Below, in pieces: positions 8,601 through 59,659 of a DNA stretch of 64,000 nt. Position 1 is the stretch's first letter. Each line of letters opens with the position of its first letter. The translations under genes and the position numbers were made by a program. The stretch is taken from the NCBI RefSeq assembly GCF_032444005.1, contig NC_091289.1, positions 155,124,001 through 155,188,000 of the forward strand, given 5' to 3'. The notes beneath the pieces are model-generated. The model saw nothing but the letters and a program-made list of their open reading frames with translations. It did no database searches and was not told where the DNA came from. The stretch is from Ranitomeya imitator (Eukaryota).

Positions 8601-11600
8601 AAATAATTGCTCGTCTTCTTAATCAGTGCGACCAAAGATGTACACAAGATCATTCTGACCTTGCAACGATATCTAATTGAACAGGAACCTAAGTAAAGCT
8701 ATAAACGCTCGTCCCCTTGAACGCGGATATTCGGAATATTCCATCACTGCCAGTCCAGGTGTCCAAGTCCTGTTTCCATTGCTTGTGTGAAAAAAGGACA
8801 TGTTCAGATCTAAAGCTTTTACTATATTAATCACATTGTCCTTTCAGATGGCTCGGTTATTTTACCACAAACCTCAGTTTGCCATATTGGATGAGTGCAC
8901 GAGCGCGGTCAGCGTGGATGTCGAAGGTTACATTTACAGCCACTGTAGGAAGGTGAGTGACCGTAGAGAGACAGGGATATTCTGATGGGGCCATTCATTC
9001 CTGAACCACAGTGTGTATATCACATTGGCAGAGGAGGAACATTCGCACCACATCGTCCATTTCATTGCTGTGCGTTTCATCTTCGCTACCATGTGCTTTT
9101 ACCGCCGCTGTGAACTTGGGACATGAGCCGCCGTTCTTGTCATGGTCGCGTATGAGCACCAATCTAACCAAACTAATCTAATGTCATATATAGTGCTGAG
9201 CGAGTGTATTCGTTGCTCGGGTTTTCCAGAGCACGCCCGGGTGACCTCCGAGTATTTATGACTGCTCGGAGATTTAGTTTTCATCACCGCAGCTGAATGA
9301 TTTACATCTGTTAGCCAGGCTGAGTACATGTGGGGGTTGCCTGGTTGCTAGGGAATCCCCACATATAATCAAGCTGGCTAGTAGCCGCAAATCATTCAGC
9401 TGCGGTGATGAAAACTAAATCTCTGAGCAGTCATAAATAGTCGGAGGTCACCTGAGCGTGCTCAGGAAAACCCGAGCAACGAGTACACTCGCTCATCACT
9501 AGTCATATATCATCAGCTTAATTAAAGGAAATATGTAGCTTGGTTTCAGAAGACCCTTTTTGAGGAGTATTTCTGAAATTTATTTCTACCCTGCAGTCAT
9601 CCCGACTGATAATACCTGTATATAGACATAATGTAGTGTAGTATCCACCTGATTTTAATGTTCCACACTGAACAAGTAAGGAGGAATTATATTGTAGCTC
9701 ATATACTAATACCAAATAAAGAGGATCGACCTATAATTAAGGTACTAAATAAGAGTCACTCATTGGTATTATAATATGTAACTCCTAATTTACCTCTTGG
9801 GGGGCTTTCACATTACGTTCTGGCATCTGTTCGGCGACCCCGTCAGGGCATCCGACCGATTCTCCCGGAAAACAGGATTCGTATGTATGCTCTAACAGGG
9901 GCCATTGGCTATAATGGTGTTGACATAGTGAACGTGCGCTCTGAAGTGCATCATTTTCGGGCGTATACGTCCACTGGAGGCTTACGCTGTCTGAGTAAAT
10001 GCCGAAAAACGATGCGTGTCAGAGCCCACATTCACGCTTTCAACACCATCGTAGCCTATGGCCTCTGTTGGCGCCTACATCCGAATCCAGTTTTGAGGGG
10101 GGATTGGACATAAGCCACAACGGGGCCGCTGAATGGGTGCCTGAATGTAGTGTCACCCTTCTTCTAATACTTAATATAGAGGAACTCTAATTTTACCCTT
10201 TATTTTACCACCATTATAAGCAATTTTCGGGTATTATCCTGTAGTTGGGAGATGTTCTGCACATGGATTTCCATCTCGTCATTAGTAATTTTTTGGCCAC
10301 TATCTTTGTGTTGAAATTTCTAGTTTGCAATAAACAAGCCTTATTTCTTCCTAGGTTGGAATCACCCTTTTCACTGTGTCACACAGAAAGTCCCTGTGGA
10401 AACACCATGAGGTAAGAGCGAGTCATAATAATTGGTGCAGTGTCAATGCTATTCATCCGTGATATCTGACCACATAAAACATGGTATGAATCTAGCAGAA
10501 TGTACAATCCTCATCTAGTCCTCCATTCTAGGAAAGCAGGTGAAGTATTAGTCCTTGAGCCTCCTTGTTATCGGCAGACCCTCAGTAAATGTACCATTGG
10601 CACTGATTGGCTGTTTTCATTAGAGGGGGTGAACCCCTGATATGTGGCACCTATATAACATACTTGTATAGCCATTTATCTGAGCACCCAGCTCTGTATT
10701 TGCTTTCACAAGGTAGTGATAATCTCCTGCTGATAAAACACTGACTTAATTGAATCAGCAAAACAAAGCCCAGTTAGTGACATCTCTGGCGTTAGAGTTT
10801 CTGCTTCTGCATCATGTTCATATCCACTTTTTGGTCTATAGGGCTGTTCACATCCACTTTTTTTTTCCTTTTTCATATCTCTGCGGACCGCACAAATCTT
10901 ATGGTACCGTCACACTTAGCGACGCTGCAGCGATACCGACAACGATCCGGATCGCTGCAGCGTCGCTGTTTGGTCGCTGGAGAGCTGTCACACAGACAGC
11001 TCTCCAGCGACAAACGATCCCGAGGTCCCCGGTAACCAGGGTAAACATCGGGTTACTAAGCGCAGGGCCGCGATTAGTAACCCGATGTTTACCCTGGTTA
11101 CCATCGTTAACGTAAAAAAAACAACCACTACATACTTACCTACCGCTGTCTGTCCCCGGCGCTCTGCTTCTCTGCTCTGGCTGTGAGCGCCGGGCAGCCG
11201 GAAAGCAGAGCGGTGACGTCACCGCTCTGCTTTGCGGCCGCTGTGCTCACAGCCAGAGCAGAGAAGCAGAGCGCCGGGGACAGACAGCGGTAGGTAAGTA
11301 TGTAGTGGTTGTTTTTTTTTACTTTACCGATGGTAACCAGGGTAAACATCGGGTTACTAAGCGCGGCCCTGCGCTTAGTAACCCGATGTTTACCCTGGTT
11401 ACCAGCGAAGACATCGCTGAATCGGTGTCACACACGCCGATTCAGCGATGTCAGCGGGAGATCCAGCGACGAAATAAAGTTCTGGACTTTCTTCCCCGAC
11501 CAGCGACATCACAGCAGGGGCCTGATCGCTGCTGCCTGTCACACTGGACGATATCGCTATCCAGGACGCTGCAACGTCACGGATCGCTAGCGATATCGTC

Positions 11601-11987
11601 TAGTGTGACGGGGCCTTTAGTCTGAATGTTGGATCAAAATCGGCAATACGAGCCTTTTGGTCCATGAAAAAAATCGGACAAGTATCTGGTGTCAATTTTT
11701 CATGGACCGCTAGATAGGAGAAGTTGGAGAAACTTTTTTTTTGTCTACTTTGGTAAAAAAAAAAAACTAGGCAGTCTGTGGTCACTCTGATCAAAACCGT
11801 GATGAACCCAGTCTGAATGAGCCCTTACTATACATATTTTCGGCTGGTAATTTTCAGTGCCTAGTCATGATAAAGTAATGTGTTTGGGTATATTTTTTTC
11901 TCTCCGCAGTACTACCTTCACATGGACGGACGAGGCAACTACGATTTCAAGCCAATTACAGATGATACAATTGAGTTTGGATCCTAG
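2538..11987 (+). CDS. ABCD3: ABCD3/PMP70 peroxisomal ABC transporter, 3' ten coding exons (gene starts upstream of the window)
   Basis: Spliced translation from ...[30 protein letters not shown] to ...[25 protein letters not shown]. Contains Walker [10 protein letters not shown]-loop YVPQ, signature LSGGE, Walker B ILDE and H-loop SHR. Exon sizes 92/73/64/78/66/90/120/105/57/78 keep one frame and match my recollection of mammalian ABCD3 exons 14-23. Confidence 0.97.
2714..2786 (+). CDS. ABCD3: ABCD3 exon (~15), [25 protein letters not shown]
   Basis: ttgcag|AGAC...ATAAA|gtaagt; 73 nt. Confidence 0.93.
3716..3779 (+). CDS. ABCD3: ABCD3 exon (~16), [21 protein letters not shown]
   Basis: polypyrimidine tract-tag|GTTT...GAG|gtaaat; 64 nt. 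Confidence 0.96.
5610..5687 (+). CDS. ABCD3: ABCD3 exon (~17), [26 protein letters not shown] (Walker A)
   Basis: gtag|GTG...GAG|gtaagt; 78 nt. Confidence 0.97.
6290..6355 (+). CDS. ABCD3: ABCD3 exon (~18), [22 protein letters not shown]
   Basis: ttttag|TTA...CAG|gtaacg; 66 nt. Confidence 0.97.
6450..6539 (+). CDS. ABCD3: ABCD3 exon (~19), [30 protein letters not shown]
   Basis: aacag|AGG...AAG|gtaaga; 90 nt. Confidence 0.97.
6659..6778 (+). CDS. ABCD3: ABCD3 exon (~20), [40 protein letters not shown] (ABC signature)
   Basis: gcag|GTC...GCG|gtatgt; 120 nt. Confidence 0.97.
7025..8284. mobile_element. Palindromic (fold-back) non-autonomous insertion, Penelope-like architecture
   Basis: 17-bp TSD ATTGATCACCTACCTAG at 7008-7024 and 8285-8301. 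Arms of ~310 nt (7151-7445 plus 7938-7952 versus 7970-8283) with a 17-nt loop. Confidence 0.8.
7446..7934. mobile_element. PIF/Harbinger MITE
   Basis: TIR GGCTACGTTCACATTTG, TTA TSD; nested in the palindromic insertion. Confidence 0.88.
8302..8591. mobile_element. hAT-type MITE (TAGTGATGAGCG family)
   Basis: Termini TAGCGATGAGCGA / TCGCTCATCACTA; same family as 9191, 12564 and 22243. Confidence 0.75.
8848..8952 (+). CDS. ABCD3: ABCD3 exon (~21), [35 protein letters not shown] (Walker B)
   Basis: tttcag|ATG...AAG|gtgagt; 105 nt. Confidence 0.97.
9191..9501. mobile_element. hAT-type MITE
   Basis: TIR TAGTG(A/C)TGAGCGAG; perfect 8-bp TSD GTCATATA. Confidence 0.88.
10355..10411 (+). CDS. ABCD3: ABCD3 exon (~22), [19 protein letters not shown]
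   Basis: cctag|GTT...GAG|gtaaga; 57 nt. Confidence 0.97.
10902..11616. mobile_element. PIF/Harbinger MITE (GGTACC(G/T)TCACAC family)
   Basis: TIRs, TTA TSD and internal inverted repeats; relatives at 25036 and 48782. Confidence 0.85.
11910..11987 (+). CDS. ABCD3: ABCD3 last coding exon, [25 protein letters not shown]
   Basis: ccgcag|TAC...TAG; 78 nt. Confidence 0.97.
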   Translation, partial: YYLHMDGRGNYDFKPITDDTIEFGS

Positions 11988-18046: not shown

Positions 18047-19068
18047 GAACAAACACCACAGTTTACAAGACAAAAATGGGCCCAACTGCACCCCGAAAAA
18101 ATGTGCAAAAAAGACAAAAAAAATATATAAAATTTTTGTGAGGTATTAGTTTATACTTTGGCCAAAATACGCAAGCTCGTAACCCGCGTCAAGGGTCCAT
18201 TTTTGTCTTGTAAACTATGGTGTCTGTTCTCATGGGGTGCATTTGGATAGCGCTGGGCAGGCCCGCCTGATCTAATAGAAGGGTGTCACTACTAGGCTTG
18301 CCTGGATGCTGTGCATCTCCATAGTGTGAACAGCGCCACATACAAGTCTTTTATGTGCAGCAATGTGCCAAGCAGCCACCCCCTCCATTAGTTTGGTAAG
18401 ATGTGAGTGGCTGCCTCATCGGTTATGCTGCACCTGTGTTGTCTCTATCTTAACCACATGGGTCCACTGCATCCTGATAGTGCATTTGTTTAGAGGCCTA
18501 GGCAGGTAAGCACCTCTGCCGTGTTTTGCTGTTTTTTCTCATTTTTGGAGGATCTCTGAATCCTCTTTTTGTGCTTTTGCTGTTTAGAATTAGGACTCGT
18601 AAGCGTGGGGACCCTTGACGCGGGTTACGAGCTTGCGTATTTTGGCCAAAGTATAAACTAATACCTCACAAAAATTTTATATATTTTTTTTGTCTTTTTT
18701 GCACTTTTTTTCGGGGTGCAGTTGGGCCCATTTTTGTCTTGTAAACTGTGGTGTCTGTTCACATGGGGTGCATTTGGATAGCGCTGGGCAGGCCCGCCTG
18801 ATCTAATAGAAGGGTGTCACTACTAGGCTTGCCTGGATGCTGTGCATCTCCATAGTGTGAACAGCGTCACATACAAGTCTTTTATGTGCAGCAATGTTCC
18901 AAGCAGCCACCCCCTCCATTAGTTTGGTAGGATGTGAGTGGCTGCCTTATCGGTTATGCTGCACCTGTGTTGTCTCTATCTTAACCACATGGGTCCACTG
19001 CATCCTGATAGTGCATTTGTTTAGAGGCCTAGGCAGGTAAGCACCTCTGCCGTGTTTTGCTGTTTTTC
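18047..19068. repeat. Inverted plus tandem duplicated non-coding element (A'-B-C-A-B)
   Basis: 18047-18198 is the reverse complement of 18608-18760; 18197-18537 is repeated directly at 18728-19068 (531-nt period). Confidence 0.85.
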
Positions 19069-19099
19069 CTGGGGTTTAGGGAGAAGAAGGCTTCGACCT

Positions 19100-21070
19100 G
19101 CGTGTTTTGGCAAGATGCAAAAAGATAGATTTCAGGTAGGCCCCACCTGTCTACCTGTATTTTGAAGCTCCCAAGTGTTCAAGCTCCATTCCTCCGGCTG
19201 GATGTCTTGGCGACTCAGTCCGCCTGGGGGTTGGAAGGGCCTTTCAAATGGACTGCTGTCAGTGACAGTAGGTGTTTTTCTGCCCATCAGAATATTCGAG
19301 TGGAAATACTTTTTAGGTTGTTGAACCTTGTACTGCCTTGATGCTTGATACAAGCAACTGCAGTCATGTTGTTCTAATATATTCGGATGTGCTGTCCAGC
19401 GATCTGGCGACCTGCTACCAGAAGGTCTTCCTCTACAGCTTTTAACTCTCTGAAATTGGATGACTTCCCGCTTGTTGTCTGGTCCCAGAGTCCTTGGAAC
19501 GGAATATTGTTTATGGTGGCTCCCCGGCCCCTCCTCCTGACATCTGATGTAATTGTAGTTAGTGGGACCTGAGTCTGGAGGTTTTTGGAATTTATCCACC
19601 ATGCCATATAGGCTCTTACTCGACCCGGCGTGTGTAGCCTTCTGTTTAGAGTACTGGGATGGCCGTTGCAGTTCCCTAAAATGTGAGCTTGAAGGACTCT
19701 GGAGTGGGCCTGAGCCCAGGCTACCAAATGGATGTAGGCTGTCATGGAGCCCAAGACCGACCTACCTTCTCTGAGTGTAGGGGACCTCATGTCTCTGAAA
19801 CTCTTGACCTTTGTTATTAAGGTCAGATGGTGGTCTTCTGGAAGGAACAACATCTGTTTTAGAGTTCAGGAGTACTTCAAGGAATTTTCTGCTTTTGGAG
19901 GGCAGTAGCTGAGACTTTTTCAGGTTCGGGATGCATCCCAGAGATCTTAATATATCGAGAGTCTTTGATACATGAGACTCCAGGGCCATCTTGGTGGAGG
20001 CTACTATCAGCAAGTCGTCCAGGTAAGGCACTATAGAAACGCCTTGACTCTGGATAAAGGTCACTGCTTCTGCCATTACCTTGGAGAAGATTCTTGGCAC
20101 TGAGGAGATGCCAAATGGAAGGACGTTGAACTGAGGGTGCTTCACAATGACGATCTCCCTGTACCGCAAATCTGATATATTCTCTGTGCCTTGGGTGGAT
20201 TGGAATATGGAAGTAGGCATCTTTCAAGTCGATGGTCGACATGAAGAAGTGAGGCCCGATTAAAGGAATGGCTGATCTTACGGATTCCATCTTGAATCTG
20301 CAGTATTTTACATGTTGGTTCATTCCCTTCAGGTTTATAATGATACGAGCCTCACCTGAGGGTTTGGCTACCAGAAACAAAGGCCACCAGGGACGACTGC
20401 ACCTCCTGTTTGACCAGCGAGCGAATCTCTTCCAAAAGGGAGGGTTGCTCTGCTCTGATCACATTGTTGATGCATGACTGGCAGAGCTTTTTATCCTATA
20501 GTGAGGGTTGCTTTATATTACAAATGGCGCACTTTTTTCTAATAGTAGTTTTGGGGTAGACTTGTCTCCCTGGAGCGAGAGGGAGAGAGGTGTCAGAAAA
20601 GAAGGACCCCCTAAAATATCCACCTGCGGTCCCCATCCCTGCAAACACTTACTGTGGCAGGGGCAGCGCTGGGCTCTGCAGACGCAGGGCTTGAAGTGCC
20701 TTCCATGCTATAAGATAGCCTTACCTCTGTGGCGACTTCGGGCAGGTTTTATAGTGGTCAGTAGCCAGCCCCTGCCCCTCCTGGGTCCATGTGCAGGCAG
20801 TGTGTCATCCGTGAGCACCCGGCATCCGGAAGTTCAGGTGCGTTCCACTGGAATGCAAGGTCCCGGAAGTGACGCACGCTCTTCACTGACGCCACCTTCC
20901 GGGACGCCAAGCTGCGCGTATGGAGGGGGAGAAGACTGGGGAGCTCAAGGAGGACCCCGGTCGGGATCTCTGGTCTGCATTGCCCTCTTGGGGTGCAGGA
21001 AGGCCAGGAGGGAGTCCAGAGGTCACCGTAGCAGGGGAGGAGGCGAGGAGTGACCACCTGCTGCCCGGCA
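19100..21070 (-). pseudogene. DIRS-like reverse transcriptase/RNase H, degenerate
   Basis: Frameshifted pieces: FLVAKPSGEARIIINLK..TIDLKDAYFHIPI, LPFGISSVPRIFSK..VPYLDDLL, and RNase H TITSD..SNFRELKAV. Confidence 0.85.
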
Positions 21071-22722: not shown

Positions 22723-23280
22723 ATCTAGGGTATGTGCACACAACGTCATTTTCAGGCAAATTCCACCTGAAATCTTTCTTAAAAAAAGCCCTTAAAAATG
22801 CTGTGAAGAATTAACCCACGCACTGCATTGTAAAAATGACTTGCTGTGGATATGGCCCATCTTTTTGAGCTTTTTTTTTAACCATTTCAGGCTTTGAAAG
22901 TTGGGAAGCGGCTAAAAGAAGTCATCTGACCATTACTCACTAGAGTTTATACATATGCAGAGGCAAAAACGGACGCGATGGGTCCAAAGAATGTTGCCAA
23001 TATTTTCCCAAAATGTCTCCTGCTTAAAAAAAAACAAAAAAAACACTCATCGGCTTCTAAAAGACGCTGTGTGCACATACCCTTATAGGTCTAGTCAATT
23101 AACACATTACACAGGGATTTTCTTGCCGATATACTGTATACATTGCATTATGTCAGAGTGGTTAGGATAGATTTAAAATTAATTACATGGTAGGAACAGG
23201 GATCTAAGGGGCAATGTTTCTCCTTATGGAGACTGACAGGCCTGGCATGTCAGAGTGAGGAGACCTATATGGCATGCATG

Positions 23281-24553
23281 TGGAGCGCCCCCAGACACAG
23301 GGCCACTAGTCACTCGGTACCGGTCCTTTCTGCTCAGTTATGCGGTTGTCACTGTGGCTGGACCCGGTCGTGACCCTCCTAAGGGGTGTCCAATGAAAGG
23401 GGTAGTACAGTCTGTCAGGGGTTCGTGACGCCACCTGTGGTGTTCGGTCAGGGTGACCGACGCTGCTGTGGGGTCCGCTGGGGTGATGGAATAGCAGCCG
23501 GATGGTATACCTTCCCGCAGGTGAAGTATGTCCCCAGGGCTTCCCAGTAGTGTGGATGGAGATGGTGTGAGGTGCAGGCAATAACGAGGACACAGTGTTG
23601 CAGTCTCTTTACCTTTTACTGAAGGCTTCAGTACACTCAGTCCAGAGCACGTTCAACCGGGCTATCAGAGACCGACCGGCCGGTCCGGTGGGCACATCCA
23701 GAGTTTCCCTCGCAGATGGAAATCGTTGCCTACCAATAGCGCCTGTGTGTTGTAGTCCTACCCTGCTGAGCATTCGGAATAGTCCTCACAACTGCTGTTT
23801 CTCTTTGTTCGTTCTCTACAGCTTTCTCTCTCTCTCTCTCTCGTTCTTTGGTTCCAGATGTTGCTAGTTTCTAACGTCCCCCAGATATGTTATGTCTAGG
23901 ACGCCACCCGTTTGACGGGAAGGCTTGGAGGTCTTCTGGGACCCTAGAGACGCCCCTCTCCCAATGTTGCCCCCTATGTCTTCGTAGGTGTAGAAGGTAG
24001 ACAGCCAACCTATAATCAACTGTCCAGCGGAATTTGAAGTAATGCCTGAAGTCAGTTACTCCTACGGTGATCCGGCCATCGACTACGCGCCTCAGTAAGA
24101 TGTTGCCTTCCTCTCTCTGCACGACTCTTACTAGCTCTCCTTTGTGCTGATCTCGTTTACACTGTTCCACAATATTCTTCCCTTCTTGTCTTTCTTAGGA
24201 TACCGCCGCAAGGTGTGCAGGCGCGGTTCCGTTACGTTCTGTTCGCTAGGCGCCTGCCAGGTTCCCACGCCTGACAGGGACCCCCCTGTGTCTTCTCCCT
24301 GCAACACCCCCTGCCACGGGATGTTGCCTGGTTCCAACCCAGTCAGCTTCTGACTAACTTCCTCCCCAGCCCCTAGTTTTACCAGTGTGAGGAGTGGCCC
24401 AATAAATAAAGCCTTTTTCTCCCCCTAGTGGCCGGAGTGTGAAGTGTAATGTGTTCTGGTGATACCTGGTCAGGAGAACTCTTTAGTGCCATCGGACGTA
24501 CCGCTACTCGCCTTGGGGCCATACTGCAACGACCAGGTCTCTGGGGCGCTGCA
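23281..24553 (+). mobile_element. Solo LTR (Gypsy-type, 1273 bp)
   Basis: Termini TGGAGCGCCCC...GGGGCGCTGCA; 4-bp TSD CATG; AATAAA near 24401; partial relative at 32436. Confidence 0.85.
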
Positions 24554-24714
24554 CATGCTCCTCTGGGAAATTAAATATGCAAATTGCTTCTTCAGAGAGG
24601 AAGAGGACTTGAGCTCTACTGCCACCTATTGGAAGCAGCGATCCTAAAAGTCAATAACGACCCTGTAATGAGCATTGTCATATGACGTAGGATAAAACCA
24701 AATCTGAATCTCAA

Positions 24715-24757
24715 TTTACAGACACTGTTTTGGGGTATTGCCCCTCGTCAGTGCAAA
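24715..24757 (-). ncRNA. Type I hammerhead ribozyme motif, core G12 mutated to A
   Basis: Minus strand UUUGCA-CUGACGA-GGGG(CAAUA)CCCC-AAAAC-AGU-GUC^-UGUAAA. Confidence 0.75.
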
Positions 24758-25035
24758 ATCTGATTTGGCTAGGTGAGAGGCTTAAAACTTGGATCTAAAG
24801 GGCAATGTTTCTCCTTGTGGAGAGTGACAAGCCAGGCCTGGCTTATCAAAGTGAGGGGACTTATACACCATGCATGCCCCTCTGGGAAATTACTAGAGTT
24901 CTAGTCCTCTTCCTCTCTGAAGAGATATTTTGCATATTTAATTTCCCGGAGGAGCATGCACGGCATGTCAATCTCCTCACTCTGACATGCCAGGCCTGGG
25001 TTGTCCCTCTCCACAAACAGAAACGTTACCTCTTA

Positions 25036-25453
25036 AGGCCCCGTCACACATAGCGACGCTTAAGCGATCCCGACAATGATACGACCTGTCAGGGATCGTT
25101 GCTGCGTCGCTATGTGGTCGCTGGTGAGATGTCACACAGTGCGATCTCCCCAACGACGCAGCAGCGATGCGGCGACCTGTAGAACGATGCTATTTCATGA
25201 TGATTCAATGGGACGTCCTGTCAACGAGGTCGTTGGTAAGGTGTCAAACACAGCGATGTGTGCTACCCAGCGGGACCTCAACGATCAAAAAATGGTCCAG
25301 GCCACTCCGACACGACCAGCGATCTCACAGCAGGGGCCTGGTCGCTGCTACGTGTCACACATAGCGAGATCGCTACTGAGGTCGCTGTTGCGTCACAAAA
25401 CTTGTGACTCAGCAGCGATCTCGCTAGCGATCTCGCTATGTGAGACGGGGGCT
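25036..25453. mobile_element. PIF/Harbinger MITE
   Basis: TIR AGGCCCCGTCACAC; TTA TSD. Confidence 0.85.
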
Positions 25454-25501
25454 TTAGATCTCAGTCTTAAGCCTCTCACCTAGCCAAATCAGATACCACA
25501 C

Positions 25502-25546
25502 TTTGCACTGATGAGGGGCAATACTCCAAAACACAGTGCCTACAAA
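25502..25546 (+). ncRNA. Type I hammerhead ribozyme motif, degenerate
   Basis: UUUGCA-CUGAUGA-GGGG(CAAUA)CUCC-AAAAC-ACAGU-GCC-UACAAA. Confidence 0.65.
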
Positions 25547-26724
25547 TGTAGATTCTGGTTTGGCTTTTATCCTAAGTCATATGGAAAGGCTTGTCAAAGG
25601 GTCGATACTGACTGTTAGGATTGCTACTTCCAATAGGTGGTGCTAGAGTTCTAAGCTCTCTCCCTTTCTGAAGAAGCAATTTGCATTGTAGGAGCAGAAA
25701 ATCTGCATCTATATTTTGAATTAATATTTTTAGCTGCCCTAATTACGATACTGGGTCTCATATAATAATTTTTTGCTATAGCTGTAATATATTCTGCAGC
25801 ACTTTACAACTGATGTCTTGAAATGTATCACGTAACACACCATGGTATATTGTAAAGTGTTTGATAAATCACAAGATTCACCTAATAGCACTGAGATTGC
25901 CACATGATTAGTTAGACTCAAACTACATATTACTACATTATGGGATTAGATGTACAAGCTTTATTCAACATTATGCAGTGTTGTGAGATGGGAAGCAGTC
26001 ACTAAAAATGGTGTCTGGGAAGAAAATGCTGCATAAGAGGGTAAACGTTTTAGGAGTCAATGACAATATCATTAACAATCCTACCCTGATATTGTATTTT
26101 AAATGGATATGTTTTTGCCTAAAAATCACTTTTCAATTTGGGTGTCAATATTCATTTTACACGGTTTGCTTTCTACACCCTCTATTTTGCATTGTGTAAT
26201 GCTGGCTGCAGAATGAGGTAACCGAAAATAATCAGTGAGCTTGTTCTGATGGAAGAATTTATAATTATAAATTAATTATTAATTATAATAAGGAAAATAA
26301 TCCTCCTAAGCTCATCTCACACTAGTTTGTGACTACAAAGTTCAGCTCAACTTTCATGTTATCCTAACACAGTGTACATAGTTATGGCTAAGGCTAGTTT
26401 CACATTTGCGTTAGAATCCGCAGCGTTTAATCCACATCCGCAAGTGCAGGAAAAAACGCATAGAAATACGTACTAACGCGGTGTTTTTTAGACGCATGCG
26501 GGGAACGCATGCGGTTAAAAAACGCCACGTTAGTACGTATTTCTATGTGGTTTTTTTTCTGCTTTTGCGGTTTTGGTGCACAGGGTGAAAAATTTAGCAG
26601 GAGAAAAATCTAGATAACCAGAAACCACCAATGGGACTACAGAGGGCGTGTATTATGGGATCTCTATATATAGACCCTTGAACAGCTGAAATCTTCAGAT
26701 TTTGCTCCTGTATGCTGTGTCATA

Positions 26725-32435: not shown

Positions 32436-32875
32436 TGGGGCGCCCCCAGACACAGGGCCACGAGTTCTCGATACCGGGCCCCTCAGTCTCTGTATTGGGA
32501 TCGTCACGGTGGCTAGACCCGGTCCGTGACCCTGCTAAGGGGCGCCCAATGAAAGGTGATGGTGTGATGCGTGGTGTGAGGCGTGATGAATAACAAGGAC
32601 ACAGGGTTGCAGTCTCTTTACCTCTTTACTGAAAGCTTTGGGATCCGCAATCCAGAGCACTGCTAACAGGGCTGGCTGAGACCGGCCGGTCCGAAGGCAC
32701 ATCCAGAGTTTCCTTTGCAGGTGGAGATCAGTGCCTACCCACTAGCGCCTGTGTGTTGTAGTCCTTCCCTGCTGAGCACCACGGGATAGTCCTCACAACT
32801 GTTGTGTCTGTGTTCGTTGTTCTTTCTCTCTCTCTTCGTCCCCCAGATGATATGGTTAGGACGCACCCGTATGAC
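32436..32875 (+). mobile_element. Truncated LTR, same family as 23281-24553
   Basis: Starts TGGGGCGCCCCCAGACACAGGGCCAC; collinear blocks shared with 23281-23900. Confidence 0.75.
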
Positions 32876-32979
32876 TGGAGAGGAGAGGTCTGTGATTTTT
32901 ATCGTAGGTACACTTCAACTGTGAGAGACAGAATGCTTATTTCCCCACTGTAGCTGATTAATCTACTAATCACAGAGTA

Positions 32980-33857
32980 CAAAAGAATTCCAATAGGCAT
33001 TATTGGTGGTGCATAAAAGTCACTCAATAACTAATAGCATATATCCGAATACATGCACCACCCATGCATGGACAATAAAGATAACTGCCAACGCATAGTA
33101 GACTAAGAACAAGAACAAATGCAGTCATAGAATCCAATAAAAACACTTTTTATTAGTAATTAATATAAAATGTACAAAAATGAACCAAACAGACAGTGTG
33201 CAATGAGGCTAGCAGCTGGTACAGAAATGCCAGAGGCAACATGAAAAAACAATAGCCGAAGGTATGGTGACCCCACTGGTAGTCCAGATACAGCTCATAG
33301 GTATAAGAAAGCATACAACATGTCAAAAGCTAATGCACAACGGGTAAATAGCAGCACCAACATATATATCTTTTTATATCTCCCATAGCGGTAGGCAATA
33401 GTATGGGCACAGACATGTAAAAAACGGTACAATATGCATATCACCTGATGTAGAGGACCTGGACCAACGCAGGTGACACCGGACCACCCCGACGCGCGTT
33501 TCGGTAAGTGTACCTTCCTCAGGGGGCGCCCTGTTTCTTTACATGTCTGTGGCCATACTATTGTGTACCGCTATGGGAGATATAAAAAGATATATATGTT
33601 GGCTGCTGCTATTTACCCGTTGTGCATTAGCTTTTGACATGTTGTATGCTTTCTTATACCTATGAGCTGTATCTGGACTACCAGTGGGGTCACCATACCT
33701 TGGGCTATTGTTTTTTCATGTTGCCTCTGGCATTTCTGTACCAGCTGCTAGCCTCATTGCACACTATCTCTTTGGTTCTTTTTTGTACATTTTATATTGA
33801 TTACTAATAAAAAGTGTTTTTATTGGATTCTATGACTGCATTTGTTCTTGTTCTTAG
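32980..33857. mobile_element. Palindromic hammerhead-bearing non-autonomous insertion (Penelope-type)
   Basis: 18-bp TSD TCTACTAATCACAGAGTA (32962-32979, 33858-33875); ~330-nt inverted arms 33096-33425 / 33533-33864. Confidence 0.82.
33487..33526 (-). ncRNA. Minimal type I hammerhead ribozyme with intact core
   Basis: Minus strand CCCC-CUGAGGA-A-GGU(ACACUU)ACC-GAAAC-GCGC-GUC^-GGGG; palindromic stem III ACGCGCGU. Confidence 0.8.
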
Positions 33858-34294
33858 TCTACTAATCACAGAGTAGTATATTAAGCCCTTGATAAATATA
33901 CAGATGGTGAGTCCTTATGTTCTCAGCTTGTCTTTACTGATAGATGAAAAAAACGCTTGACATCCATGAGAAACAGCTAACTCTCAGCTCATAGGTAAGG
34001 GCAGACTTTGGGATAAGCATCTGCCTTTGCCACTTTTATGGCTCAAGTCCAAACCACTATTCCCATCCTTCTGTGTAACTTGCTGTATATTCTGGACTGA
34101 CTACACGTGGGTTCTCACATGCATTCTCATCTAAGGCACTGCAGCTCCTATTGCCTTCTTCTTACTAAACTCTTCCCTCTCCAACATTTCCCTAATGCAG
34201 TAGCCAGGGTCATATTTCCATCCAGCCACTACAGCGATGCCTCCAGCCTGTGCCAGTCATTACTGTAGTTGCCTTTCTGCTATAGAATATAATA

Positions 34295-48781: not shown

Positions 48782-49311
48782 AGGTACCTTCACACTGAAT
48801 GATATCGCTAGCGATCCGTGACGTTGCAGCGTCCTGGATAGCGATATCGTTCAGTTTGACACTCAGCAGCGATCAGGATCCTGCTGTGATGTCGTTGGTC
48901 GCTGCAGAAAGTCCAGCACTTTATTTCGTCGCTGGACTCCCTGCAGACATCGCTGAATCGGCGTGTGTGTCTCTGCACTGGCTGTGAGCGCCGGCCAGCC
49001 GGAAAGCACAGCGGTGACGTCACCGCTCTGCTTTCCGGCTGCTGTGCTCACAGTCAGTGCAGGAAAGCACAGCGCCGAGGACAGACAGCGGAAGGTAATT
49101 ATGTAGTGTTTGTTTTTTTACTTTTACGATGGTAACCAGGGTAAACATCGGGTTACTAAGCGCGGCCCTGCCCCTGTTTACCCTGGTTACCAGCATCGTT
49201 GGTCGCTGGAGAGCTGTCTGTGTGATAGCTCTCCAGCGACCAAACAGTGACGCTGCAGCGATCGACATCGTTGTCGGTATCGCTGCAGCGTCGCTGAGTG
49301 TGAAGGTACCT
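48782..49311. mobile_element. PIF/Harbinger MITE
   Basis: TAA|AGGTACCTTCACAC...GTGTGAAGGTACCT|TAA. Confidence 0.9.
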
Positions 49312-52300
49312 TAAGACAGGAGGATTTACTGGTTTTGGGTCAATCAGGTTAGGGAGCTGTTGTGAATTCCGCTCTTGGGCTCCCTCCGGTGGTTGTAAGT
49401 GGCACTTTTGTGAGTTCTGCTCTTGGGCTCCCTCCGGTGGTTTTAAGTGGTATGGCTGCTCCTTGGATTTAGCAGTCTGCAGCTGCTTCCACTGATTGTC
49501 TTTCTGCTCGGCTATTTATGCCTGGCTCTTCCCTTCAGCCAGTGCCACTTGTCAATGGTTCCTGGTTGGATTCACATCTCTCTTGGATTTCCCTGATATC
49601 CTGACCAGTTCAGCAAAGATAAGTCCTTTCTTTGCTCTTTTCTGTCCACATGTTGTGGACTTATTCGTTCTGTGCATTCTATGTTTTGTCCAGCTTGTCA
49701 GTATGGATTAATTCAGTTAAGCTGGAAGCCCTGGGAAGCAGATTTACCCTCCACACCTTTAGTCAGGTGTGGAGATTTTTGTAAACTCTGTGTGGATTTT
49801 TGTAGTTTTTAATACTGACCGCACAGTATTCTATCCTGTCCTATCTATCTAGCTAGACTGGCCTCCTGTGCTACATCCTGGTTTCATTCTGTGTATGTCT
49901 TTTCCCTCTCCATTCACAGTCATTACTTGTGGGGGGCTATCTATCCTTTGGGGATTTTTTCTGAGGCAAGATAGTTTTCCTGTTTCTATCTTTAGGGGTA
50001 GTTAGTTCTCAGGCTGTGACGAGGTGCCTAGAAAGTGACAGGAGCATCCCATGGCTACTTCTAGTGTTGTGTTGAGCTTAGGGACTGCGGTCAGTACAGT
50101 TACCACCTCCTTCAGAGCTCGTCCCATGTTGCTCCTAAACCACCAGTTCATAACAGTACAAGAGGCCAATAATGAATTAAATGCATCTCAAAAGAAGGAA
50201 AAAAAAATTCTGAGCCATTTTTTTTTCTGTGCTCTGTTTTGTCTTTTTTTCCCCCCTCTTGATCTCTGGGTGGTTCAGGATTTATGCTCTGGCATGGATG
50301 TTCAGGGTTTGTTTTCTCGTGTGGATCAACTTGCTGCAAGAGTACAGAGTATCCAAGATTATGTTGTCCAGACTCCGGCTTTGGAGCCTAGAATTCCTAC
50401 TCCTGATTTGCTTTTTGGGGACAGATCCAAGTTTTTGAACTTTAAAAATAACTGCAAATTGTTTTTTGCTTTGAAACCCCGTTCTTCTGGTGATCCCATT
50501 CAGCAAGTTAAAATCATCATATCCTTGCTGCGTGGTGACCCTCAGGACTGGGCATTCTCCCTTGAATCAGGGGATCCAGCATTGCTGAATGTAGACGCAT
50601 TTTTTCAAGCGCTCGGATTATTGTATGACGAACCTAATTCTGTGGATCATGCAGAAAAAACCCTGTTGGCCTTGTGTCAAGGTCAGGAAGCGGCAGAATT
50701 ATACTGCCAGAAATTTAGGAAATGGTCTGTGCTCACTAAATGGAATGAGGATGCTCTGGCTGCTATTTTCAGAAAAGGTCTTTCTGAAGCCCTTAAAGAT
50801 GTTATGGTGGGCTTCCCTACGCCTACTGGTTTGAGCGAATCTATGTCTCTAGCAATTCAGATTGATCGGCGTCTGCGCGAGCGCAAAGCTGTGCACCATA
50901 TGGCAGTGTCCTCTGAGCAGAGTCCTGAGCCTATGCAATGTGATAGGATTTTGACTAGAACAGAACGGCAGGAATTCAGACGTCAGAATAGGCTGTGTTT
51001 TTACTGTGGTGATTCTGCTTATGTTATTACCGATTGCCCTAAGCGTACTAGGAGGGTCGCTAGGTCTGTTACCATCAGTGCTGTACAGCCTAAATTTCTT
51101 TTATCTGTGACCCTGATTTGCTCATTGTCGTCCATTTGTGGATTCAGGCGCTGCCCTGAACTTAATGGACTTAGAATTCGCCAGGCGCTGTGGTTTTTCC
51201 TTGCAGCCTTTGCAGAGCCCTATTCCTTTGAGGGGCATTGATGCTACACCATTGGCCAAGGATAAACCTCAGTACTGGACGCAGATGACCATGTACATGG
51301 CTCCAGCACATCAGGAAGACTGCCGTTTTCTGGTGTTGCATAACATGCATGATGTTGTTGTACTGGGTTTTCCATGGTTACAGGAACATAATTCGGTGCT
51401 GGATTGGAAAACTGTCTGTGACTAGTTGGGGTTGTCAAGGGGTACATAGTGACGTTCCTTTGATGTCAATTTCCTCTTCCCCCTCTTCTGAGGTCCCTGA
51501 GTTTTTGTCGGATTTCCAGGATGTATTTGATGAGCCCAAGTCCATTTCCCTTCCTCCACATAGGGACTGTGATTGTGCTATTAACTTGATTCCAGGTTGT
51601 AAGTTCCCTAAGGGCCGACTTTTCAATCTGTCTGTGCCAGAGCATGCCGCCATGCGAAGCTATGTTAAGGAATCTTTGGAGAAGGGGCATATTCGGCCGT
51701 CTTCGTCACCATTGGGAGCGGGTTTCTTTTTTGTTGCTAAGAAGGATGGCTCCTTGTGACCCTGTATAGATTATCGTCTTCTTAATAAGATCACGGTCAA
51801 ATTCCAATACCCCTTGCCTTTGCTTTCTGATTTGTTTGCTCAGATTAAGGGGGCTAGTTGGTTTACTAAGATTGACCTCCGAGGGGCATATAATCTTGTT
51901 CGTATTAAACAGGGTGACGAATGGAAAACTGCATTTAATACGCCCGAAGGCCATTTTGAATACCTCGTGATGCCATTCGGGCTCTCTAATGCTCCATCTG
52001 TGTTCCAATCTTTCATGCGTGATATTTTCCGCAATTATCTTGATAAATTCATGGTTGTATATTTGGATGATATTTTGATTTTTTCCGATGATTGGGAGTC
52101 TCATGTGAAGCAGGTCAGGATGGTATTCCAGATCCTTCGTGACAATGCTTTATTTGTGAAGGGGTCTAAGTGCCTATTCAGAGTTCAGAAGGTCTCTTTT
52201 TTGGGTTTTATTTTTTCTCCCTCGTCTATGGAAATGGATCCTGTTAAGGTCCAAGCTATTCATGACTGGATTCAACCCACATCTGTGAAGAGCCTTCAAA

Positions 52301-52754
52301 AATTTTTGGGCTTTGCTAATTTCTATCGCTGTTTCATTGCCAACTTTTCCAGTGTGGTTAAGCCCCTTACTGATTTGACGAAGAAAGGCGCTGATGTGAC
52401 GAATTGGTCCTCTGCAGCTGTTGAGGCCTTTCGGGAGCTTAAACGCCGATTTACTTCTGCCCCCGTGTTGCGTCAGCCGGATGTTTCCCAGAAGATGTCT
52501 GTTATCTGGGTTGTTTGTGACCGATTCTCTAAAATGGTCCATCTGGTACCTTTGCCTAAGTTGCCTTCCTCCTCAGATTTGGTTCCATTGTTTTTTCAGC
52601 ATGTGGTTTGTTTGCATGGCATTCCGGAGAATATTGTGTCTGACAGAGGTTCTCAGTTTGTCTCTAGGATGGGCATTGATTTGTCTTTTTCTTCGGCGTT
52701 TCATCCTCAGACTAATGGCCAAACTGAGCGAACTAATCAGACCTTGGAAACCTA

Positions 52755-54402
52755 CAGTTAGGTCCATATATATTTGGACAGAGACAACATTTTTCTAATT
52801 TTGGTTATAGACATTACCACAATGAATTTTAAACAAAACAATTCAGATGCATTTGAAGTTCAGACTTTCAGCTTTCATTTGAGGGTATCCACATTAAAAT
52901 TGGATGAAGGGTTTAGGAGATTCAGCTCCTTAACATGTGCCACCCTGTTTTTAAAGGGACCAAAAGTAATTGGACAGATTCAATAATTTTAAATAAAATG
53001 TTCACTTTTAGTACTTGGTTGAAAACCCTTTGTGGGCAATGACTGCCTGAAGTCTTGGACTCATGGACATCACCAGACGCTGTGTTTCCTCCTTTTTGAT
53101 GCTCTGCCAGGCCTTCACTGCGGTGGTTTTCAGTTGCTGTTTGTTTGTGGGCCTTTCTGGCTGAAGTTTAGTCTTTAACAAGTGAAATGCATGCTCAATT
53201 AGGTTGAGATCCAGTGACTGACTTGGCCATTCAAGAATATTCCACTTCTTTGCTTTAATAAACTCCTGGGTTGCTTTGGCTTTATGTTTTGGGTCATGGT
53301 CCATCTGTAGTATGAAACGACGACCAATCAGTTTGGCTGCATTTGGCTGGATCTGAGCACACAGTATGGCTCTGAATACCTCAGAATTAATTTGGCTGCT
53401 TCTGTCCTGTGTCACATCATCAATAAACACTAGTGACCCAGTGCCCCTGGCAGCCATGCATGCCCAAACCATCACACTGCCTCCGTCGTGTTTTACAGAT
53501 GATGTGGTATGCTTTGGATCATGAGCTGTACCACTCCTTCGCCATACTTTTCTCTTTCCATCATTCTGGTAGAGGTTGATCTTGGTTTCATCTGTCGTAA
53601 GAATGTTCTTCCAGAACTGTGCTGGCTTTTTTAGATGTTTTTTTGTAAAGTCCAGTCCAGCATTTTTATTCTTGATGCTTATGAGTGGCTTGCACCGTGC
53701 AGTGAACCCTCTGTATTTACTTTCATACAGTCTTCTCTTTATGGTAGATTTGGATATTGATACGCCAACCTCCTGGGGAGTGTTGTTCACTTGGTTGGTT
53801 GTTGTGAAGGGGTTTCTCTTCACCATGGAGATTATTCTGCGATCATCCACCACTGTTGTCTTCTGTGGGCGCCCAGGTCTTTTTGCATTGATGAGTTCAC
53901 CGGTGCTTTCTTTCTTTCTCAGGATGAACCAAACTGTAGATTTTGCCACTCCTAATATTGTAGCAATTTCTCGGATGGGGTTTTTCTGTTTTCGCAGCTT
54001 TAGGATGGCTTGTTTCACCTGCATGGAGAGCTCCTTTGACCGCATGTTTACTTCACAGCAAAACCTTCCAAATGCAACCATTACACCTCAAATCAACTCC
54101 AGGCCTTTTATCTGCTTAATTGAGAATGACATAACGAAGGGATTGCCCACACCTGTCCATGAAATAGCCTTGGAGTCAATTGTCCAATTACTTTTGGTCC
54201 CTTTAAAAACAGGGTGGCACATGTTAAGGAGCTGAAACTCCTAAACCCTTCATCCAATTTTAATGTGGATACCCTCAAATGAAAGCTGAAAGTCTGAACT
54301 TCAACTGCATCTGAATTGTTTTGTTTAAAATTCATTGTGGTAATGTCTATAACCAAAATTAGAAAAATGTTGTCTCTGTCCAAATATATATGGACCTAAC
54401 TG
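52755..54402 (-). mobile_element. Tc1/mariner transposon, full length, ~222-bp TIRs
   Basis: TA|CAGTTAGGTCCATATATATTTGGACAG at both ends; TIRs 52755-52976 and 54181-54402; inserted in the Gypsy integrase. Confidence 0.95.
53008..54045 (-). CDS. Tc1 DD34E transposase, 345 aa, uninterrupted
   Basis: MRSKELSMQVKQAIL..GRPQKTT..TDETK..QMDHDPKH..WPSQSLDLNLIEH; 34 residues between the second D and E. Confidence 0.9.
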   Translation of the reverse strand: MRSKELSMQVKQAILKLRKQKNPIREIATILGVAKSTVWFILRKKESTGELINAKRPGRPQKTTVVDDRRIISMVKRNPFTTTNQVNNTPQEVGVSISKSTIKRRLYESKYRGFTARCKPLISIKNKNAGLDFTKKHLKKPAQFWKNILTTDETKINLYQNDGKRKVWRRSGTAHDPKHTTSSVKHDGGSVMVWACMAARGTGSLVFIDDVTQDRSSQINSEVFRAILCAQIQPNAAKLIGRRFILQMDHDPKHKAKATQEFIKAKKWNILEWPSQSLDLNLIEHAFHLLKTKLQPERPTNKQQLKTTAVKAWQSIKKEETQRLVMSMSPRLQAVIAHKGFSTKY

Positions 54403-57671: not shown

Positions 57672-59659
57672 CGAAATGCATCGGTTTTTATGAAGGTTAT
57701 TCAGAGAGTGAAATCTCTGTTCCCCTGTACTTTACACACTCTCCCCTGCTCCAGGGCTGAATCTCTGTTGCCACCCATGGTATCTATTATTGTCTGCAGC
57801 GCTGACTTCACATCGACAGCGCTGCAGACAATTAGTGAGCTCAGCAATTTATGATGTCTATTCAAGCAGAGTCACTGAACTAAGTTACTGACTGCAGCGC
57901 TGTCATCGATGTAATGATGAAGTCAGTAATGATTTACAGCACTTTTACATGGCGATATTTTGCATCAGTATTTAACAGACTCCAGGAGTGGATCCAAAAC
58001 ATAGAAGAGGTGAAAGTCATTCAGTTATTATTTTTCTCAGTGTTTGCTCCTGTCTGTTTTTTAGCTGACAAATACTGATGTAAAATACTGGCCAAAATTC
58101 TCACTGTGTGAATGAGGCGAGGAAGCTGCTTGTAATCCTGCTGTAATAGAAGTCCTTATTCCAATGATGAGTGCACACTTGCTTGTCTTCTCTGCTCCAT
58201 GATATTCATCAGAGCAGGAGCAACACCTGGGGCAAAACTGTGGCCGGCAGATGTCCGGCCCTATGACACATTGATATGTGATGGACCCCGACTCCCAAAC
58301 AAAATGAATCACACAGACGCACACAAAATAAATACACAAAGCATTGTAATTAGGTGTCAAACGTTCTCAATTTTATTTACATTCACGACACCAAAAATGG
58401 CACAACCCCCGACTCACGAAGAGTCACCCTCCAGCACTCAAGAGAGGAAAAACCCCATGGTGGAAACCTCTAGGAAACTATGGCTGGAGGATCGCCCTTC
58501 CCTTGGGCTTAGAGAGTTAGTGCCGATATATAACAGATGTAACAAGTTTTATCATTTGTACATTTTACCAGATTTACAGAGAACGACATAACAAATATAG
58601 ACTATAAATGTGATAAACCGGATGTGGGAGAGATCTGGCTGCGATATCGGTCACCACATTGGTTGTTAGACCCAATTTAGTTGATCTGATTGCCCAGATG
58701 GATGAACCATTTCTTCCTTACAGATCCAGGTCCACCTCTCATAAATTTAGATTTTTGGTTACAGGGATTATTCATAATGGATAACCTCTAATAGGAGAAA
58801 TACCCCCTCCCCCTTCTCCCATCCCAATTTATCACCCATTAAAGTCATAGGTGCTTCCATGAACTCCCAAAGGAGAGCTGCTCTTTGTAGAGGGTAACAG
58901 AAGGGGATCCTGTGCTGGGGACCCCCCTCGGTTACCTTCCCACACCCTAGGGGTGTCTAAAACAGACAAACCCTTTCCCTGCTAGAACCTCCAAATTTCA
59001 CCAAGGTCGGCACATTACGTGGGGTGGTCAAGCTCAACGTCCTCAGGCGCATCAGTAATGGCACTGATCGTGGCAGTGCGGCCTTCTGTTATGGAATCTT
59101 CTTTATCACACTTGTTTATGACCTCATAACAGTTGTCATGGTTACTGCAGAGGCTATTACTGATGCAGGACCCAAGTATTAACCCTTTCATCATTGGTAA
59201 TTCACTTCATTATAGAGGCAACTAACTGCACTTGTTACCAAGCAGGCGCCTATCATTATGGCTTCCCTTAGGCACCATAAGAAATACAGATTAAACGTGC
59301 AAGTGTTTCAGGAGTGTGTTGCACTTTTTAAATCCAGAGATTGGATTTATAGCTAGCACTTTACACAGAAATAAATAAGGGGAAATTACTTGTAAAATAA
59401 TACTATAGGGAATTACATTTCAAACATTTTCCTAATGTACAGTTCACATAATTACATAGGTTGAAAAAAGACCTAGGACCATCAAGTTCAACCTATCTTC
59501 AAAGTTATATATTTTATATTACTAGATTATTTATAACTCACAATGTCATGTTTTGTTAAAAAAAAGCATCCGGACCTTTTTTAAATGTTGTTATAGTAAC
59601 TGCCATTACTAGCATTCCAGTCTGATTGCTCTTACTGTAAAGAACCCTTTCCCGTGTGG

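What the first reader, a model, noticed from the sequence alone, without database searches (positions are those of the whole stretch)
23200..25684. Retrozyme-like array: ~320-nt hammerhead monomers, tandem and head-to-head
Seen: after removing the nested solo LTR and MITE, the region is ~1.3 monomers on the minus strand (period ~314 nt) joined at 24893 to ~1.1 monomers on the plus strand (period ~329 nt). Each strand has one type I hammerhead, and a degenerate 14-nt TSD flanks the whole unit. Established: newt satellite 2 and animal non-LTR retrozymes are tandem monomers of a few hundred nt with one hammerhead each, and they yield monomeric or circular RNAs. Inferred: a frog retrozyme family whose insertion came from a circular RNA template.
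Basis: partly seen in the sequence, partly recalled or inferred. Interest (0 to 1): 0.78.

Follow-up and report, generated by a model that had tools for sequence, protein, structure and literature searches.

The report
Old dead frog hammerhead retrozyme insertion
This is an old, decayed, head-to-head insertion of a very abundant ~330-base non-coding frog repeat that carries a hammerhead self-cutting RNA motif whose key catalytic base is mutated in both arms; the kind is already known from amphibians, so the locus is ordinary.

Summary
Window 23200-25683 is one insertion bounded by a 12/14 target-site duplication. It consists of ~1.3 units on the minus strand joined at 24893/24894 to ~1.13 units on the plus strand. 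A 1273-nt LTR-like insert and a 418-nt Harbinger-type MITE split it later.

Each arm has one type I hammerhead-like motif. Copy A is the only hit of a relaxed hammerhead descriptor in the window, against 0 hits in 300 random 128-kb sequences. It matches a canonical hammerhead in a metagenomic tandem repeat at 25 of 26 bases. The single difference is catalytic G12, which is A in both arms. No Rfam hammerhead model reports either copy.

The unit is hugely repeated in the frog: about 20,000 contigs per DNA run lie on it. Tandem unit joints occur elsewhere in the genome. Family near-fixed letters restore helices I, II and III and the GUC site in copy B. The family's letter at position 12 could not be read.

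Best reading: a dead, old copy of a non-LTR retrozyme-type family, inserted the Penelope way with both target strands primed. A circular RNA template is not shown; a linear multimer of three or more units fits equally. This scan has already reported many such retrozymes elsewhere in this genome. Interest is low.

The parts
23186..23199 (.). Left copy of the target-site duplication (CATGGTAGGAACAG)
   Evidence: 12/14 match to 25684-25697; 22 of 5000 shuffles reach it
23200..23280 (-). Distal part of the minus-strand array (second, partial unit; unit phase ~65-146)
   Evidence: 81-85% identical to 24796-24876 and complementary to 24955-24998
23281..24553 (.). Nested LTR-like insert (probable solo LTR): TG..CA ends, 13-nt terminal inverted repeat, CATG duplication at 23277-23280 and 24554-24557
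   Evidence: Other genomic copies read straight through the site (loose ends at 24555). Partial relative at 32436-32835
24554..24893 (-). Main part of the minus-strand array (one full unit plus a 20-nt overlap; period 319)
24715..24757 (-). Hammerhead relic A. Helix I UUUGCA/UGUAAA, CUGACGA, helix II GGGG-CAAUA-CCCC, AAA in place of GAA (position 12 = A, at 24731), helix III AC-AGU-GU, and C17 at 24721 (cut would fall between 24721 and 24720). A distal helix I CCAAAUC/GAUUUGG extends the motif to 24698-24768
   Evidence: Only hit of the relaxed descriptor in 128 kb, 0 hits in 300 random sets. 25/26 identical to the canonical hammerhead of L002. Not reported by Rfam
24893..24894 (.). Inversion joint: minus-strand array starts at unit phase ~46, plus-strand array at phase 1, with no spacer
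   Evidence: The joint is private to this locus: other copies continue with the unit end before 24892 (loose ends)
24894..25035 (+). Plus-strand array, first part (unit phase 1-142)
25036..25453 (.). Nested Harbinger-type MITE (418 nt, ~21-nt terminal inverted repeats, TTA duplication at 25033-25035 and 25454-25456)
   Evidence: Relatives at 10907-11619 and 48818-49306. Its internal palindromes explain the sub-threshold microRNA-family hits
25457..25683 (+). Plus-strand array, second part (phase 143-329, then 40 nt of a second unit). Homology to the unit runs on to 25686, a 3-nt overlap (CAT) with the TSD
   Evidence: Summed read depth falls from 1e4-1e5 to 7-8 at 25688
25502..25546 (+). Hammerhead relic B: UUUGCA, CUGAUGA, GGGG-CAAUA-CUCC, AAA (position 12 = A at 25528), ACA-CAG-UGC, then C. 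It has private changes at 25525, 25539, 25542, 25548 and 25549 against letters near-fixed in the family
   Evidence: Family letters
25684..25697 (.). Right copy of the target-site duplication (CATTGTAGGAGCAG)

Best explanation
The locus is one old, dead insertion of a very high-copy, protein-free ~320-330-nt repeat of the animal non-LTR retrozyme type. Each unit carries a type I hammerhead of the amphibian short-helix-III kind.

Inferred insertion mechanism: a Penelope-like element's enzyme nicked both target strands 14 bp apart. Each 3' end primed reverse transcription on a multimeric (or circular) retrozyme RNA, and the two cDNAs were joined in the middle. That gives two inverted, 5'-truncated arms with their 3' ends outward, inside a 14-bp duplication.

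The hammerhead is catalytically dead in both arms, because G12 is A. Either the template already had A, or the C11.1-G12 CpG decayed to CpA twice. Copy B has also lost U16.1 and a helix I pair. Each strand has only one motif, so the locus cannot release unit-length or circular RNA. A solo-LTR-like element and a MITE inserted later.

Shown: the anatomy, the TSD, the abundance, tandem joints elsewhere, and hammerhead ancestry of the motif. Inferred: the Penelope-type mechanism, the time at which G12 was lost, and past ribozyme activity.
For: Anatomy and in-phase continuation across both nested elements.

TSD of 12/14, p about 0.004.

Hammerhead ancestry: copy A is the only hit of a type I descriptor with position 12 left free in 128 kb, against 0 hits in 300 random 128-kb sequences. 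Copy A is 25/26 identical to the canonical CUGACGA-GGGGCAAUACCCC-GAAAC module of a 580-nt tandem repeat in metagenome contig L002, and the only difference is G12.

Family level: about 19-20 thousand contigs per DNA run lie on the unit. Summed depth is 1e4-5e5 on the unit against 7-8 in the flank. Joints 25638-25642 -> 24892-24893 show tandem units elsewhere. Letters with over 90% share in the family change copy B to CCCC (helix II), GUGUC (cleavage triplet) and UGCAAA (a perfect 6-bp helix I).

CpG logic: seven sites keep CG in one arm or both, and at six of them the other arm has lost it, to TG or CA at five.

Literature: amphibian retrozymes of 330-350 nt with weak helix III (PMC7229834). 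Frog retrozymes as non-autonomous Penelope-like derivatives (10.64898/2026.07.22.740005). An inverted 5'-truncated copy next to Penelope-like insertions (PMC8557442). A Penelope-like enzyme cleaves and extends both strands, and hammerhead mutants still insert (PMC11167929).

Earlier notes of this scan report 353- and 384-nt hammerhead retrozymes with inverted arms in this genome. These are leads, not tests.
Against: No Rfam hammerhead model reports either copy, at gathering or at E<=10, even on 131-nt slices. This weighs little, because Rfam also misses the canonical L002 motif.

G12 is A in both arms. Under independent CpG decay this has a probability of only about 0.14 (my estimate), so the template may already have been dead.

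The family's letter at position 12 was not readable.

No Penelope-like reverse transcriptase was tied to this family here.

The minimum-free-energy fold pairs GCACUG of the core with CAGUG(U/C) and does not form the three-way junction.

The runs are contigs, so there is no evidence on RNA ends or circles.
Confidence: 0.72

Rival explanations
1. The family, or the subfamily that gave this copy, spread with an already dead core (A at position 12). It is a hammerhead-derived repeat that Penelope-like machinery mobilises without any self-cleavage, so it is not a working retrozyme.
For: Both arms carry A12. Two independent CpG-to-CpA decays have a probability of about 0.14, estimated. G at position 12 is not near-fixed among genomic copies, whereas other private changes of copy B show up as near-fixed alternatives. 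Hammerhead catalytic mutants of a Penelope-like element still insert in vitro (PMC11167929).
Against: Family near-fixed letters keep all three helices, the CUGAYGA box and GUC intact, as expected if masters were functional. C11.1-G12 is a CpG, the fastest-decaying site. The clipped-read consensus before 25550 (87 and 77 contigs, agreement only ~0.5) reads CCCAGAAAAAC(G/A)TGTC, which has a G aligned near position 12. This is a weak hint.
Confidence: 0.3
2. The unit is the pseudo-LTR of an autonomous Penelope-like element, and this locus is a heavily 5'-truncated copy of it, not a separate non-autonomous retrozyme.
For: Retrozymes and pLTRs are sequence relatives in frogs (10.64898/2026.07.22.740005). 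Read depth along the unit is very uneven: 6e3 to 5e5 summed depth. One segment, around the ATTTGCAT octamer, is far more abundant, as if shared with another element.
Against: Both arms cross a unit-to-unit junction with no ORF between. The same junction is seen in other genomic contigs. The unit holds only short ORFs of up to 43 codons.
Confidence: 0.1
3. The hammerhead likeness is chance in an ordinary satellite or fold-back MITE.
For: No Rfam hit. The GAAA box is missing. The region folds as a plain hairpin.
Against: 0 hits of the relaxed descriptor in 300 random 128-kb sequences. 25/26 identity to a canonical hammerhead module. Family letters improve all helices. The 14-bp TSD and the tandem-plus-inverted layout do not fit a cut-and-paste MITE.
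Confidence: 0.03

Closest known systems
Animal non-LTR retrozymes (axolotl Rtz331/Rtz353; Xenopus families), PMC7229834 and 10.64898/2026.07.22.740005
   Same: ORF-less tandem units of ~320-330 nt. One type I hammerhead per unit with a weak 2-3-bp helix III. Very high copy number. TSD longer than 4 bp. Host genome with Penelope-like elements.
   Different: Position 12 of the core is A in both arms. No unit-length or circular RNA could be shown. Outside the hammerhead the unit was not compared with published families, because no sequences were available to the tools.
Penelope-like element insertion architecture (PMC8557442; PMC11167929)
   Same: Partial tandem plus an adjacent inverted 5'-truncated copy, inside one target duplication. 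AT-rich target flanks. Agrees with cleavage and extension of both target strands.
   Different: No reverse transcriptase/GIY-YIG ORF in the insert. The two outer ends lie at different unit phases (~146 and ~43), not at one fixed initiation site.
Newt satellite 2 (own knowledge; cited in PMC7229834)
   Same: ~330-nt unit with a hammerhead that has a very short helix III. The unit also keeps an ATTTGCAT octamer in its most abundant segment. From memory (Coats et al. 1994), satellite 2 is transcribed from an snRNA-type promoter. That parallel is a lead and was not tested.
   Different: Dispersed TSD-bounded insertions rather than long satellite blocks at this locus. No sequence comparison was possible.
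Canonical hammerhead in metagenome contig L002 (580-nt tandem repeat)
   Same: Identical CUGACGA box, helix II GGGG/CCCC, loop CAAUA and AAAC. 25/26 bases.
   Different: L002 has G12. Nothing else in the unit is alike apart from a marginal 15-nt inverse match. Different unit length; unknown organism.

Membership tests
Hammerhead ribozyme, type I (Rfam CL00010) | CUGANGA box (C3-A9) | tested here: met
   CUGACGA at 24745-24751(-) and CUGAUGA at 25508-25514(+)
Hammerhead ribozyme, type I (Rfam CL00010) | GAAA box with catalytic G12 | tested here: not met
   A at position 12 in both copies (24731 read on the minus strand; 25528). The family's letter is unreadable
Hammerhead ribozyme, type I (Rfam CL00010) | Helices I (open), II and III around the core, and an NUH cleavage triplet | tested here: met
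   Copy A: helix I 6 bp plus a 7-bp distal part, helix II 4 bp, helix III 2 bp, GUC. Copy B fails (GCC, one broken helix I pair), but family near-fixed letters restore it
Hammerhead ribozyme, type I (Rfam CL00010) | Score at or above the gathering score of an Rfam hammerhead model | tested here: not met
   No hit even at E<=10 on 131-nt slices. Controls: 33485-33528(-) scores 25.5 bits, below the gathering score of 34, and the canonical L002 motif is missed too
Hammerhead ribozyme, type I (Rfam CL00010) | Self-cleavage | not testable with these tools
   Needs in vitro transcription of monomeric and dimeric constructs
Animal non-LTR retrozyme | ORF-less tandem units of a few hundred nt, without LTR, PBS or PPT | tested here: met
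   Periods 314-329. Unit-to-unit junctions occur in both arms and in other genomic contigs. Stop-free stretches inside the unit reach 43-44 codons; longer ones of 54 and 79 codons only cross the private inversion joint
Animal non-LTR retrozyme | One functional type I hammerhead per unit | tested here: inconclusive
   One hammerhead-derived motif per unit, dead in this copy. State in family masters unknown
Animal non-LTR retrozyme | Dispersed, repeated, TSD longer than 4 bp | tested here: met
   About 2e4 contigs per DNA run. 14-bp TSD, 12/14
Animal non-LTR retrozyme | Unit-length linear and circular RNAs | not testable with these tools
   All runs were contigs. Runs guessed to be RNA carry family copies inside longer contigs of 605-2729 nt
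Penelope-like element (autonomous) | Reverse transcriptase plus GIY-YIG ORF | tested here: not met
   No ORF over 135 aa in 24540-25700, and that one lies in the MITE. The insert 23281-24553 has no listed ORF of 130 aa or more

The most novel reading that the evidence does not exclude
A retrozyme-type family reached tens of thousands of copies in a poison frog while carrying a catalytically dead (G12A) hammerhead. That would show in vivo that self-cleavage and circularisation are dispensable for Penelope-driven spread of these repeats.
Probability: 0.25. Interest if true: 0.45.

Novelty: new member of a known kind. Interest (0 to 1): 0.2.

Why it matters
By itself it matters little. It is one decayed copy of a class already described in amphibians, and this scan has met that class many times in this genome.

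Two modest points remain.

- The locus is a clean example of the Penelope-type layout in which both strands are primed, applied to an ORF-less repeat. It needed at least about three units of template.
- Both arms share a G12-to-A core. This raises a testable question: do such repeats keep spreading after the ribozyme dies, as in vitro work on a lizard Penelope-like element suggests?

Tried and rejected
1. Rfam at gathering and at E<=10, on the whole region and on 131-nt slices, gave no hammerhead. I do not take this as proof of absence, because the canonical L002 motif is also missed. The sub-threshold whalefall-1 and microRNA-family hits are hairpins of the unit and palindromes of the MITE.

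2. I searched for other copies in the window. There are none.

3. I tried to fetch other family copies through spurious ORF products. The search for homologous proteins on the 43-codon open frame that starts in the hammerhead found no candidate.

4. Exact-pattern scans of genome contigs found nothing. The metagenome scan gave L002, which was useful, and L001, which has C at position 12 and is unrelated.

6. A paper search for the helix II sequence returned only unrelated primer hits.

7. A circular-RNA fold of the unit gave z -3.35 (A) and -1.83 (B), with 60% of bases paired. This is compatible with a structured retrozyme RNA but not diagnostic.

8. I considered arguing that the arms came from different subfamilies, and hence from a heterogeneous linear template, using their 7-nt and 2-nt indels. 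I rejected this as undecidable, because the indel table hides a row and long gaps may be clipped.

9. I considered two separate insertions. The single TSD around the whole unit argues against this.
Full report
**1. What is there**

- A minus-strand array runs 24893->24554 and continues, across a 1273-nt insert, 23280->23200. It holds about 1.3 units with a period of 314-319 nt.
- A plus-strand array runs 24894->25035 and continues, across a 418-nt insert, 25457->25683. It holds about 1.13 units with a period of 329 nt.
- The arrays meet head-to-head at 24893/24894 without a spacer. The minus array starts there at unit phase ~46 and the plus array at phase 1.
- All overlapping pieces are 78-88% identical.
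- No other copy lies in the 64-kb window.

**2. The nested elements are secondary**

The insert 23281-24553 has TG..CA ends, 13-nt terminal inverted repeats and a CATG duplication. It has a partial relative at 32436-32835. It is probably a solo LTR. I only describe it.

The insert 25036-25453 has ~21-nt terminal inverted repeats and a TTA duplication, as Harbinger-type MITEs do. It has relatives at 10907-11619 and 48818-49306.

Contigs from other genomic copies continue through the 24554 site with uninterrupted unit sequence (loose ends).

**3. One insertion event**

CATGGTAGGAACAG (23186-23199) and CATTGTAGGAGCAG (25684-25697) flank the whole unit and match at 12/14 positions. Only 22 of 5000 shuffles of the two 40-nt junction neighbourhoods do as well. 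Summed read depth drops from 1e4-1e5 to 7-8 at 25688, which fixes the right boundary. The unit's last three bases (CAT) overlap the duplication.

**4. The hammerhead question**

In the RNA sense, copy A (24715-24757, minus strand) reads UUUGCA CUGACGA GGGG-CAAUA-CCCC AAA AC-AGU-GU C UGUAAA. It has the following parts:

- helix I of 6 bp, followed further out by a 7-bp CCAAAUC/GAUUUGG helix;
- the CUGANGA box;
- a 4-bp helix II with a 5-nt loop;
- a 2-bp helix III with a triloop;
- a GUC triplet.

Everything a type I hammerhead needs is present except position 12, where the catalytic G is an A.

A descriptor that leaves position 12 free finds this one site in both strands of the window. It finds none in 300 random 128-kb sequences with the window's dinucleotide make-up. 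An exact-pattern scan of metagenome contigs returned L002, a 580-nt tandem repeat with CCUAA CUGACGA GGGGCAAUACCCC GAAAC UAGUA UUAGG. Copy A matches that module at 25 of 26 bases, and the one difference is G12. The motif therefore descends from a hammerhead.

Copy B (25502-25546) has the same A12. It also has CUCC in helix II, GCC instead of GUC, and a broken helix I pair.

**5. Rfam**

No hammerhead model reports either copy, at gathering or at E<=10, even when only 131 nt are searched. There were two controls. The minimal hammerhead at 33485-33528(-) scores 25.5 bits, below the gathering score of 34. The canonical L002 motif is not reported at all. The negative result therefore says more about the models' fit to short-helix-III hammerheads than about this motif. 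As a membership test it is still not met.

**6. The family**

All runs were laid as assembled contigs at 80% likeness.

- About 19,000-20,000 contigs per DNA run of the same organism lie on the unit.
- Joints 25638-25642 -> 24892-24893 show unit-end to unit-start junctions, that is tandem arrays, elsewhere in the genome. After removing the MITE they imply a unit of ~328-331 nt.
- The inversion joint is private to this locus.
- Letters with over 90% share in the family correct copy B at five places. 25525 T>C gives CCCC. 25539 C>T gives GUGUC. 25542 A>G gives UGCAAA, a perfect 6-bp helix I with UUUGCA. The other two are 25548 and 25549. With them helix III becomes ACA-CAG-UGU.
- The family-level motif therefore has all helices, the box and GUC.
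- The table keeps only rows whose share reaches about 0.9 in some run, and 106 rows are hidden. All that can be said for position 12 (24731, 25528) is that G is not near-fixed.
- A clipped-read consensus before 25550 reads CCCAGAAAAAC(G/A)TGTC, with a G aligned near position 12. Its agreement is only ~0.5, so it is a hint and no more.
- Depth varies about 80-fold along the unit. It is highest around the conserved ATTTGCAT octamer. Part of the unit may therefore be shared with other, more abundant relatives.

**7. When was G12 lost?**

C11.1-G12 is a CpG. In the A/B alignment seven sites keep CG in one arm or both, and at six of them the other arm has lost it, to TG or CA at five. This implies roughly 25% retention per copy. 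It gives about a 0.14 chance that an ancestral CG became CA in both arms independently. That estimate is my own arithmetic.

It is therefore somewhat more likely that the template already carried A12. I put the reading "the family or subfamily spread with a dead core" at about 0.3. It would not be a great surprise, because catalytic hammerhead mutants of an Anolis Penelope-like element insert normally in vitro (PMC11167929).

**8. Mechanism**

Penelope-like insertions are typically partial tandems with an adjacent inverted 5'-truncated copy (PMC8557442). A purified Penelope-like enzyme cleaves and extends both target strands (PMC11167929). That fits this locus:

- two arms with their 3' ends outward at a 14-bp staggered duplication;
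- AT-rich target flanks;
- inner ends joined at 24893/24894.

Frog retrozymes are reported to be non-autonomous relatives of Penelope pseudo-LTRs (10.64898/2026.07.22.740005). Amphibian retrozymes of 330-350 nt with weak helix III that cleave as dimers are described in PMC7229834.

Placed on one RNA, the arms need about 430 + 185 + 373 nt, roughly three units. A linear multimeric transcript and rolling reverse transcription on a circle both supply that.

**9. Function now**

There is none. Each strand holds a single mutated motif, so even an active core could not release a unit. The local minimum-free-energy fold pairs GCACUG with CAGUG(U/C) and does not form the three-way junction. The unit as a circle is moderately structured, with z -3.35 for A and -1.83 for B. 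Runs guessed to be RNA contain family copies only inside longer contigs.

**10. Context and earlier notes**

The window is transposon-rich. Earlier notes of this scan report many hammerhead retrozymes in other pieces of this same genome, a poison frog by their account. They describe 353-nt and 384-nt families, several with inverted arms and 13-15-bp duplications, and some with degenerate cores. I used them as leads. The only one I tested myself is the hammerhead at 33485-33528. The kind of element has thus been found before by this scan on other DNA of this genome.

**11. Verdict**

It is a new member of a known kind and of low interest.

Noticed in passing
window 32962-33875 (hammerhead at 33485-33528, minus strand): A ~900-bp palindrome with a minimal type I hammerhead at its centre (Rfam Hammerhead_1, 25.5 bits, E 0.0013, below the gathering score of 34). 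It is flanked by a direct repeat CTACTAATCACAGAGTA (near 32963 and 33859). It looks like a Penelope-type fold-back insertion. The ~330-nt unit studied here has no blastn match to it.
   Followed up: partly
window 58620-59089 (+): 7SK RNA match above the gathering score (52.5 bits). It covers the full 331-position model but is spread over 470 nt, so it is a 7SK gene or pseudogene with about 140 nt of extra sequence.
   Followed up: no
window 50051-55140: Remnants of a Ty3/gypsy-type retrotransposon (gag, RVT_1, rve, Tf2-1 SH3). A Tc1/mariner-type transposase ORF is nested on the opposite strand at 53008-54081.
   Followed up: partly
window 32436-32835: Partial relative (~80% identity) of the LTR-like insert 23281-24553. 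It lies just upstream of the other hammerhead palindrome.
   Followed up: no
window 10907-11619 and 48818-49306: Two further copies (75-86% identity over the aligned pieces) of the Harbinger-type MITE that split the plus-strand arm. Its internal palindromes give sub-threshold hits to microRNA families (MIR7526, 44.6 bits against a gathering score of 110).
   Followed up: partly
L002 1-1112 (metagenome contig TBL_comb47_HYPODRAFT_10135176): A 580-nt tandem repeat with a canonical type I hammerhead: helix I CCUAA/UUAGG, helix III of one pair capped by the palindrome CUAG. It is probably a retrozyme of an unidentified lake eukaryote. Rfam does not report it at E<=1.
   Followed up: partly
window 24577-24584(-), 25679-25686(+); mutated at 24928-24935(+): An ATTTGCAT octamer sits in the most abundant, best-conserved segment of the unit. 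From memory, newt satellite 2 is transcribed from an snRNA-type promoter with an octamer. This is a possible internal promoter and was not tested.
   Followed up: no
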